Source: Macrostomum lignano
Taxonomy: Eukaryota
NCBI GenBank assembly: GCA_002269645.1
Contig: NIVC01001905.1
Coordinates: forward strand, 1 to 64,000
Direction: 5' to 3'
DNA length: 64,000 bases
Shown: positions 16,060 to 19,414 of the stretch, piece by piece
Layout of the letters: every line of letters starts with the position of its first letter
Numbering within the stretch: position 1 is the first letter of the stretch
The notes under the pieces: generated by a model
The model's database searches: none
What the model saw: only the letters and a program-made list of their open reading frames with translations
Told to the model about the DNA's origin: nothing
Program-made: the position numbers and the translations under genes

Positions 16060-16593
16060 TTAAACCTTTGCCTGACAAACCAGCCATTCCATAGCCGCTG
16101 TGAGACCTTCTCCGCTCAAGGCGCAGCAAGCTTGAATATGCCAAGGCCTGCAGCGCAGACAGGTGAGGTCTAGTGCTCGACTAATCTCGGCTGCAGTTAA
16201 CCTGTTAGCAACATCCTGCTTATTAGCTAGAACCAATAGGGATGCCTTGCGCAGCTGATCGGATGACAGCATACTGTACAGCTCGGATTTAATCAGTTCA
16301 AGACGCTTCTGGTCTGAGGAATCAACAACCAGTATGACAAAATCTGTGCCAGAATAATATGACTCCCAGGTAGACCGCACTGAACTCTGTCCGCCAAGAT
16401 CCCACAATAAAAATTTCAGTCCACGCCATTGCAACTCTTCAACATTGGATCCTATAGTTGGAGCAGTATGGACAGTTTCGCCCAGCACTAGCTGGTAGAG
16501 TACAGTGGTTTTGCCAGCATTGTCTAGTCCTACTAGAAGCAGTTTGCATTGACGGCTGCCAAACAGGCGCCTAAGCTTGGCGAGGGCTACACC
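16060..16593 (-). CDS. ARL5: ADP-ribosylation factor-like GTPase ARL5; CDS uninterrupted from Gly2, initiator Met not encoded in this exon
   Basis: Frame extends 5' of the track ORF: [30 protein letters not shown]...[11 protein letters not shown]...WDLGGQ...ANKQD...[14 protein letters not shown], an ARL5-type signature. Preceded by acceptor ctaatttcag| at 16594-95. 177 codons plus Met = 178 aa. Confidence 0.9.
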   Translation of the reverse strand, partial: [177 protein letters not shown]

Positions 16594-19414
16594 CTGAAAT
16601 TAGATTGGAGAGGTTTAGTTGTTGCCGAAGTGATAGTTAATCTATTTATATTTATCCCTCATTCCTTCCCTTTATTTATGTGCCATAACACCAATACTCA
16701 ACTCTTGACTTGGTCCAAATCTTTGCTTCACATCAAAGCAACTATTTGATATTTGGATTGGTTAGCTTTCTGATTCCAATTTGAACTGAATATTTGGTTG
16801 ATTCAATTCAATTCTGAATATTTGTTCAATCTCTACCATTACGGAATGCAATGATATTTGCATTCACAAAAACATTGTAGGACATTGTGATGCACAGAAA
16901 AAAGTGCTACAATTTATGTTGCACTAAGAGACAACAATATAACTTATTCAATTTAAGATTGTCAAATTCATTCAGTTTAAAAAATATACAACAATTGTTG
17001 CAATTTTGTTTAAAACTCTCATTTATAACAAAGATTTCATGCTAGGTTTAAACCAAGGAAATGTAAGATAAACTAATTTAAAGAATTATAAATATATCTA
17101 TATAAATCTATTATGACTCAATAATTTAGATAGTGGTATATATCAAGATTGATAATTATTAATGTCAAAAAAGAAATACAAGTAATAGATTCAAGCCCTA
17201 CACAACTTAGATATTTCATAGTACATAATTTAACATGCAATTTGGGTTTGTACTATAAAGCTGTTGAAGCATAAGTTTGATTGTACATTGGAACTTTTAC
17301 ACTGTGAAGATAGGAGCTAAGAATGATCTTATCTTACAATGGCTGCATATAATGGGCCCTTTGTCCCTTAGGTATTCCACACATTGTTTGGATAAAAGTG
17401 TATTACTTATCTTTCTTATTAGTGTAGGCTAAGACCTTATTGGCTAACTTAACCTTGGTAGGCTATGTATGACTAATTAGTAATGGCTAAAAGGAAAGAC
17501 ATCAATTTAGCCTAGTTGAAAAAACTTTTTTGTCCCTTTTCCAAAGTACACCCTTTCTACTTTATAAAATATTTCCACATATACATATTTAGCAAGCTTT
17601 GTCAATTGCTATAAGGGTCTACCCATATAGCTAAGGGTAAATATATAGGTTTTTTAAAGAATACAATCCACTTTGGTAAAAGCCACTTTGGTAACAAAAA
17701 CAAGTCTTTTAAAAGTAGTTATTGTTACTTAAAATGGTTCATAGATTAATTTCCTGGAGTCAAAATAATTTAATGAATGAAACTTGACAGTCTACTTTAG
17801 ATTAGTAAAATGCATGAAAGCAAATAATAGAGAAAACAATTTAGACATATTAGCATCAGCAAAAGACAGTTCTGAATTCACGTAGCCTCGACCTTTAGTA
17901 GACCTGTGATTTAAATCTGATGATTGATGAGTAATGATGACATAAAAGCATATTTTTCGTCGTCAATGCGTCGAGACTCGCGATTAGGATTTTATTTTAT
18001 TCGAAAGCTGTAAATTCAAATTATGTGAAATCTAACTTTATTGATTAAAACTGCTAAATACTTTTTTTAAATAAATAAAATCATAAGTGGTTTTTTTTCA
18101 GCAATAAAATTCTCTACAGCAAATATTGTCATATGAAATAGATTCATATGAAAATTTGTTTGTTCAACACAGCAAAATGTAAACGCGATATTTTAAACTA
18201 AGCTAGAATTATTTTACAAATTGCTAATTTGTTGACCATGCTGACTATACTTTAGTTAACACGCTGTTGAACCGGGGCCGGGTAAAAGTCTGTTGACGCT
18301 CACTAGTGAAGTCGGTTTAGCCTACTATAGAAATGCTTAAATCTTGCGTCAAACCTATAGGAAAAGGTCAAGGACCTGATATACAACGGTGCATGTAACT
18401 TCTACATACATGTAGTGGTTCTTGACAATCTTGGAAAAGGTTTATATTTGTTTTTTTATTGCTACATGTACAGCAACAGCCTCTCGCGTGCTGATCAGAA
18501 AGCGAAACTCGTAACCTTGAGTAAAGCAAGGTAGACGCCCCGAGCTGCTGAATATAGAAGGATCATCGAACCTGGCGACGCATAACAGTAGAATTAGCGT
18601 ACGGTGATTAACTAGCTACATGTAAATGTCTGCCTGTCGTGGCATTTACATGTCAAGGACTACTAAACAACACTATTGTTCCTTGGTACATGTACCTGTG
18701 TCTGGTGCCATTATTGACACCATCGGTGCCGCAAATTAAAAGTTACTTTTAAGTTAATATTTATAATTACTACTGCCCCATCTAAGTAAGTCAACTGCAA
18801 ATTTGGTATACCTCTGGCAATCAGCGAATAACACAAATCCCCGTCTGCTTTTTTGTCCGATATTTCAGGGAAAAATTGAAAAAAGAATTCAAAGCAAATC
18901 AGTTAGAGACAGTTCTTTGAGGAAATAGGGAAATATCCTTATAATTGTATCAAAGCATAAAGTGTCGTCTGCTTCTACACCGTAAATTTTGCCATTGTAA
19001 TGGATCTTAGAAACCTTTTTTAGTTCGAATTAAGAAGGTGGGTCGATCTTATCCCTTGGTTAATTTTAAATTTACATCTAGCTGATTATAACTATTGGAA
19101 TCTCCGGTTGTATGATTGTAAAATTAATAGTAGCGCTTGCTTACCAACGAAGGAGTTTTAGAAAAAGTTAAAGTATAATCGTATGCAAGTTATTGTTGCA
19201 ATAAAATTAAGCTGAAAGTATTGTATGAATACAAATAATCGACCAGTACGCATAAAGCACATTATTTGCCTCAATTGAATATTACCATCAAGGCTTCGGT
19301 ATAAATAGAATCACAGAATTTCAAGTTGAAGAATAATTTCGTGAAAAAGATAATTGCAACAATTGGGTAAAAATAAGAAATTAAAAAGTCCTATGTAGAG
19401 CCATATTTGACTGA

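What the first reader, a model, noticed from the sequence alone, without database searches (positions are those of the whole stretch)
16560..16620. ARL5 starts at Gly2 right after a splice acceptor: start codon possibly donated by a spliced leader
Seen: the minus strand reads ccaatctaatttcAG|GGT GTA GCC CTC GCC AAG. The exon begins exactly at the conserved Arf/Arl myristoylation Gly2 ([12 protein letters not shown]) with no ATG, and adding one Met gives a normal 178-aa ARL5. Known: flatworm spliced leaders end in AUG, which can act as the initiator. Inference: ARL5 is translated and myristoylated only after trans-splicing. Alternative: an upstream cis exon ending in ATG; weak ATG|GT candidates exist, e.g. 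near 16836 (ATG|gtagag) and 19287 (ATG|gtaata).
Basis: partly seen in the sequence, partly recalled or inferred. Interest (0 to 1): 0.8.

Follow-up and report, generated by a model that had tools for sequence, protein, structure and literature searches.

The report
ARL5 start codon supplied by spliced leader
This flatworm (Macrostomum lignano) ARL5 GTPase gene has no start codon in the genome and almost certainly takes its AUG from the trans-spliced leader RNA, a trick known in flatworms since 2006, so this is a tidy new example and not a new mechanism.

Summary
On the minus strand a TTTCAG acceptor (AG = 16595-16594) directly abuts GGT (16593-16591). An uninterrupted 177-codon ARL5 reading frame runs from there to a TAA at 16062-16060. 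An in-frame TAA lies three codons upstream, and the first internal Met is residue 108.

The window is Macrostomum lignano contig NIVC01001905.1. This species' 35-nt spliced leader (SL) ends ...TTGCATG.

Two near-identical copies of the locus, and an old ARL5 paralogue (70% aa identity, unalignable upstream DNA, present as two copies), also begin at Gly2 right after a [T/C]TNCAG acceptor. None has an in-frame ATG. GenBank lists all five coding sequences without a Met, and names the four it labels as "partial". The annotation pipeline cut transcripts at SL-read peaks, so this is indirect RNA evidence.

None of the four upstream ATG|GT sites fits the species' donor motif. Tapeworm and fluke ARL5 genes keep a genomic ATG, so the Macrostomum state looks lineage-specific.

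Best reading (about 0.85): SL trans-splicing at 16593 creates AUG-GGU, giving a 178-aa MG... protein fit for N-myristoylation. I saw no reads or peptides. The mechanism is that of Cheng et al. 2006. Verdict: new member of a known kind, low to moderate interest.

The parts
16594..16599 (-). Splice acceptor TTTCAG (AG = 16595-16594), proposed SL trans-splice acceptor; the outron lies upstream (higher coordinates)
   Evidence: Sequence. It matches the M. lignano trans-acceptor motif [T/C]TNCAG (PMC8629364). The same motif sits at the same codon boundary in the near-identical copies L001/L004 and in the paralogue L002/L003.
16600..16602 (-). In-frame TAA three codons upstream of Gly2; it closes the frame in unspliced RNA
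16063..16593 (-). Single-exon ARL5 coding sequence, codons 2-178 (GVALAK...CQAKV), with no genomic start codon
   Evidence: tblastn against human ARL5A. Pfam Arf, 210 bits. Best database hits are ARL5A/B/C. Alignment A1.
16060..16062 (-). TAA stop codon
16032..16056 (-). Three AATAAA poly(A)-signal hexamers (16056-16051, 16045-16040, 16037-16032) just after the stop, implying a very short 3'UTR
   Evidence: Read directly from the sequence. Usage was not tested.
16837..16839 (-). Rejected alternative: ATG|gtagag, 243 nt upstream of the acceptor
   Evidence: The donor GTAGA does not fit GT[G/A]AG. Three further ATGs lie within 50 nt upstream of it, at 16885, 16875 and 16863. It is present in the near-identical copies, but only inside a block that is 94% identical overall. 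The paralogue has no counterpart within 2.3 kb.
19286..19288 (-). Rejected alternative: ATG|gtaata
   Evidence: The donor GTAAT does not fit GT[G/A]AG. The site lies 127 nt after the stop (19415) of the upstream 715-aa gene, so probably in that gene's 3'UTR. It is absent from L001 and L004.

Best explanation
The locus is a functional, intronless ARL5 (Arf-like small GTPase) gene of Macrostomum lignano whose genomic coding sequence starts at codon 2. Proposed mechanism: the primary transcript carries an outron ending in TTTCAG. The spliceosome joins the 35-nt spliced leader (...UUAUUGCAUG) to G16593. The SL's only AUG, its last three bases, then becomes the first AUG of the mRNA and sits directly in frame with GGU-GUA-GCC. 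Translation from it gives the 178-aa protein [12 protein letters not shown]... Removal of the Met would then expose Gly2 for N-myristoylation, as in other ARL5 proteins. RNA that is not trans-spliced cannot make the protein: an in-frame TAA lies three codons upstream and the next in-frame AUG is codon 108, past the P-loop and both switch regions. Shown here: the gene anatomy, its conservation in two paralogues, the motif fit, the absence of a plausible cis donor, and the species' SL sequence. Inferred: actual SL addition at this site (indirectly supported by the public annotation), initiation at the SL AUG, and myristoylation.
For: Anatomy. Organism and contig: (L005 is identical to window 6060-26590). 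The SL ends in ATG followed by a GTAAG donor: PMC8629364 and PMC5173321. The SL has a single ATG and no in-frame stop, and SL plus exon translates to 178 aa. The acceptor fits [T/C]TNCAG, the top motif at 21,754 SL sites. Conservation: the window, L001, L004 and the paralogue pair L002/L003 all read YTNCAG|GGN with no in-frame ATG before the upstream stop. Upstream DNA of the two paralogues does not align, while their coding sequences show pN = 0.18 against saturated pS = 0.83, i.e. long-term purifying selection. GenBank coding sequences PAA92468, PAA71716 and PAA79382/PAA79423 are labelled 'partial' and start at the first base after the acceptor. The window's own CDS (P0122) also lacks a Met and starts one codon later. 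The annotation pipeline trimmed the SL and cut transcripts at SL-read peaks (PMC5730564). A Met-less CDS starting there, with stops just upstream, therefore implies a transcript 5' end at the acceptor. [quoted passage not shown] 2006 via PMC9851317). The Macrostomum SL ATG is noted as a translation start (PMC10468722). ARL5 binds the TGN through an N-myristoylated helix (PMC6829661). GVALAK and GLIIAR fit the PROSITE N-myristoylation pattern G-{EDRKHPFYW}-x(2)-[STAGCN]-{P} (pattern recalled from my own knowledge).
Against: No SL-containing read, cDNA or peptide for this gene was seen here. The transcript evidence is second-hand, through the form of the annotation. A search for the SL-ARL5 junction in the only searchable read-derived collection found nothing, but that collection would not be expected to hold Macrostomum RNA. 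The window's own annotated CDS starts at Val3 (16590), not Gly2, which is unexplained jitter. The ATG|GT at 16839 is conserved in the three near-identical copies. The SL AUG has U at -3, a weak Kozak context, although +4 is G.
Confidence: 0.85

Rival explanations
1. A conventional cis-spliced 5' exon ending exactly in ATG (for example 16839-16837|gtagag, or one further upstream) supplies the Met; the acceptor at 16594 is an ordinary intron acceptor.
For: Four ATG|GT sites exist within 3 kb upstream (A at 19288, 18723, 18239 and 16839). The one at 16839 is present in all three near-identical copies. Parasitic flatworms share acceptors between cis- and trans-splicing (PMC12582326).
Against: Four such sites in 3 kb is about the chance expectation (roughly 3). 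None fits the species' donor motif GT[G/A]AG. The 16839 site lies in a block that is 94% identical overall, so its conservation says nothing. It is preceded by three ATGs within 50 nt. The paralogue has no ATG|GT within 2.3 kb, and its two more distant ones also miss the motif. Five RNA-seq-based gene models all lack such an exon and have Met-less coding sequences.
Confidence: 0.08
2. The gene is a 5'-truncated pseudogene or an annotation or assembly artefact, and no functional ARL5 is made from it.
For: No start codon. Intronless, so retrocopy-like. GenBank calls the sibling copies 'partial'. The genome is repeat-rich and duplicated.
Against: The reading frame is intact over 177 codons in five copies. 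All G-box motifs are intact. Non-synonymous change is far below saturated synonymous change between paralogues (pN = 0.18, pS = 0.83). The truncation falls at exactly codon 2 in both paralogues, behind a good acceptor. No other ARL5 carrying an ATG was found for this species among the listed hits. A retrocopy of a trans-spliced mRNA would carry the SL sequence in the genome, and it does not.
Confidence: 0.03
3. Translation starts at a non-AUG or internal codon of an RNA that is not trans-spliced.
For: Near-cognate codons exist upstream of the paralogue's Gly2 (ATC, ACG, TTG).
Against: In the window only TTT and CAG lie between the TAA and Gly2, and neither is a near-cognate start. There is no in-frame ATG, GTG or TTG in the first 35 codons. 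The first Met is residue 108, or residue 63 in the paralogue, which would delete the P-loop. Such starts would also destroy the universally conserved MG N-terminus.
Confidence: 0.02

Closest known systems
Schistosoma mansoni and other flatworm mRNAs that use the spliced leader's 3'-terminal AUG as initiator (Cheng, Cohen, Ndegwa & Davis, J Biol Chem 2006; 281:733)
   Same: The SL ends in AUG. The acceptor is placed so that the SL AUG is in frame with, and indispensable for, the main ORF. There is no genomic start codon.
   Different: Different species (a free-living macrostomorph) and a different SL sequence. This particular gene is not reported in any paper I could search. There is no experimental proof here. 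Here the junction creates exactly the Met-Gly needed for N-myristoylation, and it does so in two paralogues.
ARL5A/ARL5B of human, and ARL5 of other animals
   Same: 54-60% identity over the full length, the same 178-179 aa size, invariant Gly2, P-loop GLDNAGKT, WDxGGQ and NKQD motifs. The presumed role is at the trans-Golgi network through a myristoylated N-terminal helix (PMC6829661).
   Different: The other ARL5 genes whose DNA I examined (tapeworm and fluke) encode Met1 in the genome. The Macrostomum genes do not.
ARL5 of Taenia crassiceps and Dicrocoelium dendriticum (parasitic flatworms)
   Same: Orthologous proteins (55-56% identity) from the same phylum, which also has AUG-terminated SLs.
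   Different: Their genomic sequence reads ...CTTCATGGGCGTG... and ...GGACCATGGGTGTC..., with the ATG contiguous with Gly2, and their coding sequences contain introns. Outsourcing of the start codon is therefore not ancestral to all flatworm ARL5 genes.
slORFs: ORFs started from NUG/AUG codons in spliced leaders of nematodes, Oikopleura and trypanosomes (PMC9851317)
   Same: A start codon is delivered in trans by the leader.
   Different: Those mostly use near-cognate codons and often create alternative or extended ORFs. Here the canonical, conserved ORF depends on a true AUG.

Membership tests
ARL5 subfamily of Arf-family small GTPases | Arf-family GTPase domain | tested here: met
   Pfam PF00025 Arf, 210.5 bits, E = 1.6e-62, covering profile positions 5-171 of 174.
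ARL5 subfamily of Arf-family small GTPases | Closest relatives are ARL5 proteins and not other Arf/Arl proteins | tested here: met
   Nearly all named hits outside M. lignano among the best 120 are ARL5, ARL5A, ARL5B or ARL5C, at 53-61% identity. A reciprocal search and a phylogeny were not done.
ARL5 subfamily of Arf-family small GTPases | Nucleotide-binding motifs (P-loop GxxxxGKT, WDxGGQ, NKQD) and N-terminal Gly2 | tested here: met
   [14 protein letters not shown] and NKQD all fall in invariant columns, and the first Gly aligns with invariant Gly2.
ARL5 subfamily of Arf-family small GTPases | GTP binding, N-myristoylation and trans-Golgi localisation | not testable with these tools
   Needs biochemistry or cell biology. 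There is only a motif-level fit to the N-myristoylation pattern.
Flatworm mRNAs whose initiator AUG is donated by the spliced leader (Cheng et al. 2006 class) | The species has an SL RNA whose exon ends in AUG | tested here: met
   From the literature, not from the window: the M. lignano SL is ...TTATTGCATG followed by a GTAAG donor (PMC8629364; PMC5173321). No SL gene is present in the window.
Flatworm mRNAs whose initiator AUG is donated by the spliced leader (Cheng et al. 2006 class) | A 3' splice acceptor with no matching cis donor, at the 5' end of the ORF | tested here: met
   TTTCAG fits [T/C]TNCAG. None of the four upstream ATG|GT sites fits GT[G/A]AG. Donors not preceded by ATG were not surveyed.
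Flatworm mRNAs whose initiator AUG is donated by the spliced leader (Cheng et al. 2006 class) | The SL AUG is in frame with the conserved ORF and no usable genomic AUG exists | tested here: met
   SL plus exon gives the 178-aa MGVALAK... protein. There is an upstream in-frame stop and the first internal Met is residue 108.
Flatworm mRNAs whose initiator AUG is donated by the spliced leader (Cheng et al. 2006 class) | SL-containing transcripts joined at this exact site | tested here: inconclusive
   Only indirect evidence: all five GenBank coding sequences lack a Met and start at, or 3 nt after, the acceptor. They come from a pipeline that cuts transcripts at SL-read peaks. No reads were accessible. 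The junction search in metagenome contigs was empty and uninformative.
Flatworm mRNAs whose initiator AUG is donated by the spliced leader (Cheng et al. 2006 class) | Translation actually initiates at the SL AUG | not testable with these tools
   Needs N-terminal proteomics, ribosome profiling or a reporter assay.
Genes with a cis-spliced 5' micro-exon ending in ATG | An upstream ATG immediately followed by a consensus donor, conserved among copies | tested here: not met
   The four candidates have donors GTAAT, GTGTC, GTCAA and GTAGA, against the consensus GT[G/A]AG. The paralogue's two candidates are GTAAA and GTATT.

The most novel reading that the evidence does not exclude
Start-codon outsourcing may be a selected, systematic feature in Macrostomum and not a one-off. 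Both ARL5 paralogues have kept an acceptor exactly at codon 2 across a divergence old enough to saturate synonymous sites. An unrelated neighbouring gene does the same. Because the acceptor consensus CAG|G coincides with the first base of a Gly codon (GGN), proteins starting Met-Gly (N-myristoylated proteins) could be especially prone to losing their genomic ATG. That would make synthesis of part of the myristoylated proteome strictly dependent on SL trans-splicing, and possibly regulated by it. It would also mean that many GenBank 'partial' M. lignano proteins are in fact complete once one Met is added.
Probability: 0.15. Interest if true: 0.5.

Novelty: new member of a known kind. Interest (0 to 1): 0.25.

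Why it matters
The practical value is for annotation. These M. lignano ARL5 entries are listed in GenBank without a Met, four of them labelled "partial", although they are complete once the leader's Met is added. The same is probably true of many other "partial" entries in this model flatworm. Pipelines that trim the full SL, ATG included, will systematically create such cases.

The biological value is as a clean example. A conserved, essential-looking N-terminus (Met-Gly for myristoylation) is assembled from two RNAs, so functional protein can be made only from trans-spliced mRNA. M. lignano is transgenic-tractable, so this locus could serve as a compact reporter for SL trans-splicing and SL-AUG initiation in vivo.

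It does not reveal a new mechanism.

Tried and rejected
- **SL gene in the window.** I searched for the 35-nt SL with up to 3 mismatches and found none. An Rfam scan at gathering thresholds gave no hit.
- **Transcript-derived proteins carrying Met1.** An exact look-up of M+ORF for three alleles found nothing in the collection. The 90% cluster holds only three GenBank genome-derived members, so no Logan or transcriptome contigs were available.
- **SL-ARL5 junction in metagenome contigs.** Searching ATTGCATGGGTGTAGCCCTCGCC gave 0 hits. This is uninformative, because Macrostomum RNA is not expected there.
- **Gene IDs and ARL5 in papers and supplements.** Searches for Mlig003408, Mlig001563, Mlig002685 and ARL5A/B/C found nothing. 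Cheng et al. 2006 and Wasik et al. 2015 are not held, so I cite them only through papers that summarise them.
- **Operon explanation.** The upstream same-strand gene ends 2.8 kb away here, 6 kb away in L001, and is absent within 10 kb in L004. The paralogue's upstream neighbour is divergent. This is above the 1-kb operon threshold of PMC8629364, though I did not subtract repeats. I treat the gene as a monocistronic, outron-type target.
- **Retrocopy of a trans-spliced mRNA.** Rejected, because no SL sequence is present in the genome upstream.
- **Pfam scan of the paralogue's neighbouring gene.** The first 200 aa gave no family.
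Full report
**1. What is in the sequence**

The minus strand reads ...ctccaatctaatttcag|GGT GTA GCC CTC GCC AAG....
- The AG is at 16595-16594 and the first base after it is 16593.
- From 16593 the frame is open for 177 codons, [30 protein letters not shown]...[10 protein letters not shown], to a TAA at 16062-16060.
- Three codons upstream of the Gly there is an in-frame TAA (16602-16600).
- No in-frame ATG, GTG or TTG occurs in the first 35 codons, and the first Met is residue 108.
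- tblastn with human ARL5A aligns its residues 2-178 to 16593-16063 as one ungapped block (54% identity, E = 2e-66). The whole coding region is therefore a single exon that lacks only codon 1.
- Pfam gives Arf at 210 bits.
- Three AATAAA hexamers follow the stop within 30 nt.

**2. Whose genome it is**

The protein search returned Macrostomum lignano entries as the closest hits (98% and 70% identity). Nearly all other named hits are ARL5A/B/C of other animals at 53-61%. The exact-sequence look-up places the window on NIVC01001905.1 of assembly GCA_002269645.1 (Mlig_3_7), and window coordinates equal contig coordinates.

M. lignano has one spliced leader, CGGTCTCTTACTGCGAAGACTCAATTTATTGCATG, followed in the SL RNA gene by a GTAAG donor. 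About 30% of its genes are trans-spliced (PMC8629364). An independent k-mer consensus ends the same way (PMC5173321).

**3. Comparative evidence**

The genome holds two further near-identical copies of this locus: L001 (PAA92468) and L004 (PAA71716), with 4-5 nt differences in 531. This fits the species' hidden polyploidy. It also holds an older paralogue in two copies, L002/L003 (PAA79382/PAA79423), at 70% aa identity.

All five copies share the same anatomy: a YTNCAG acceptor directly followed by GGN = Gly2, and an in-frame stop 3-9 codons upstream with no ATG in between.
- Window: atttcag|GGTGTAGCC
- L001 and L004: attttcag|GGTGTAGCC
- L002 and L003: acttgcag|GGGCTGATAATAGCC

Upstream DNA of the two paralogue lineages does not align at all. 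Between the paralogues' coding sequences, synonymous sites are saturated (pS = 0.83) while pN = 0.18. Both genes have therefore been under purifying selection for a long time, and both have kept the acceptor at exactly the codon 1/2 boundary. [T/C]TNCAG followed by GG occurs at about 7e-5 per position in the window, so coincidence is not a credible explanation.

In a 13-sequence alignment the first Gly falls in the invariant Gly2 column, and only the Macrostomum proteins lack Met1. By contrast, ARL5 of the tapeworm Taenia crassiceps and the fluke Dicrocoelium dendriticum has the ATG contiguous with Gly2 in the genome. The Macrostomum arrangement is therefore lineage-specific.

**4. Indirect RNA evidence**

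GenBank lists all five coding sequences without a Met, and the four that carry a GenBank name are labelled "partial". Four start at the first base after the acceptor. The window's own CDS starts one codon later, at Val (16590).

The annotation was built from RNA-seq. SL-containing reads were trimmed of the leader and mapped. The TBONE pipeline cut transcripts at the resulting peaks, and TransDecoder then called ORFs (PMC5730564). With stop codons just upstream in the genome, a CDS that lacks a Met and begins at the acceptor is possible only if the transcript model itself begins there. An assembled upstream cis exon would instead have given a complete ORF. This is my inference about a pipeline, not a read I have seen.

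**5. The cis-exon rival**

Within 3 kb upstream there are four ATG|GT sites (A at 19288, 18723, 18239 and 16839), about what chance predicts.
- Their donors (GTAAT, GTGTC, GTCAA, GTAGA) all miss the species' donor motif GT[G/A]AG.
- The 19288 site lies 127 nt past the stop of the upstream gene and is absent from L001 and L004.
- The 16839 site is shared by the three near-identical copies, but it lies inside a block that is 94% identical overall. It is also preceded by three other ATGs within 50 nt.
- The paralogue has no ATG|GT within 2.3 kb.

I give this rival about 8%.

Pseudogene or artefact, and non-AUG or internal initiation, are each unlikely. The frames and G-box motifs are intact, only TTT and CAG lie between the stop and Gly2, and the first internal Met would delete the P-loop.

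**6. Mechanism**

The SL contains a single ATG, its last three bases, and no in-frame stop. Joining it to 16593 gives a 32-nt 5'UTR followed by AUG-GGU..., and a 178-aa protein MGVALAK....

Use of the SL AUG as initiator is established in flatworms. [quoted passage not shown] 2006, as summarised in PMC9851317; also PMC12582326). The Macrostomum SL ATG has been noted as a translation start codon (PMC10468722).

ARL5 attaches to the trans-Golgi network through an N-myristoylated amphipathic helix (PMC6829661). GVALAK and the paralogue's GLIIAR fit the classical N-myristoylation pattern (pattern recalled from my own knowledge).

The anatomy, conservation and motif fit are shown. SL addition at this site, initiation at the SL AUG and myristoylation are inferred.

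**7. Surroundings**

Four genes lie on the minus strand:
- a 715-aa protein without Pfam hits (24779-19415);
- ARL5;
- a CSRNP_N-domain gene (from 13083);
- a Metallophos-domain gene (ATG at 8662).

Gaps of about 3 kb lie on both sides of ARL5, and they vary between copies. The paralogue's upstream neighbour is divergent. ARL5 is therefore best seen as a monocistronic, outron-type trans-splicing target and not as an operon member.

**8. Novelty and score**

The mechanism is textbook for flatworms. What is new is only this instance, and its neat link to the Met-Gly myristoylation signal in two paralogues. I file it as a new member of a known kind, interest about 0.25.

The most novel reading not excluded is that start-codon outsourcing is systematic and biased towards Gly2 proteins, because the acceptor consensus CAG|G overlaps a GGN codon. 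I rate that at about 15%. A second, unrelated example turned up by accident next to the paralogue, which suggests the phenomenon is common in this genome.

Noticed in passing
L002:4441 (minus strand) and L003:4480 (minus strand): The divergent neighbour of the ARL5 paralogue (428-429 aa) also has a Met-less CDS that starts directly after a GCAG acceptor (cgcccgcag|CACCGCCTG), with an in-frame stop 6 codons upstream. It reads HRLWCTGLVRHLWRRRRRQAAIVAAAVTALLALLLL..., which looks like a type-II membrane anchor, and its first Met is residue 74. It is a second candidate for a start codon donated by the SL. No Pfam family was found in the first 200 aa.
   Followed up: partly
window 16590 vs 16593; L003:4480 vs L002:4441: The GenBank CDS in the window's record starts at Val3 (176 aa), while the two near-identical copies start at Gly2 (177 aa). 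The same one-codon offset appears between the two copies of the paralogue's neighbouring gene. This looks like jitter in the annotated transcript 5' ends and not biology.
   Followed up: partly
window 13085-13040 (minus strand): The annotated CDS of the CSRNP_N-domain gene begins 2 nt after a TTCCAG acceptor and has no ATG. If an SL is added there, its AUG is out of frame and opens an 8-codon uORF (MFACRTEP). The real start is probably the ATG used in copies L001 and L004.
   Followed up: partly
window 8672-8660 (minus strand): In the Metallophos-domain gene a TTTCAG acceptor lies 4 nt before the genomic ATG (8662). An SL added there would place its AUG 7 nt upstream and out of frame, opening a 25-codon ORF. 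That would pose a start-site choice between two AUGs.
   Followed up: no
window 15528-15972: A 22-bp tandem repeat (about 20 copies, GGATTTCAGGATCGGGATCTTA) starts about 60 nt beyond the last ARL5 poly(A) signal.
   Followed up: no
window 5243-64000 (e.g. 48308-53600, 34110-35845, 32200-33375, 58433-60645, 62631-64000): The window is packed with minisatellite arrays (45 TRF rows with score of at least 150). One is a 5.3-kb array of a 49-bp unit and another is a purine-rich 27-mer array. These arrays coincide with windows of extreme GC skew in the composition profile, which they probably explain.
   Followed up: no
window 16594-19600 vs L001 and L004 upstream regions: The three near-identical copies of the locus are about 99% identical in the CDS and 94% identical just upstream. 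They differ by kilobase-scale insertions and deletions further upstream: the upstream gene is 2.8 kb away here, 6 kb away in L001, and more than 10 kb away in L004.
   Followed up: partly
L006:2965-3003 (Taenia crassiceps ARL5): A TTTTCAG acceptor lies 25 nt upstream of the genomic ATG of the tapeworm ARL5. It may be a trans-splice site, and an SL AUG added there would be out of frame with the genomic ATG.
   Followed up: no
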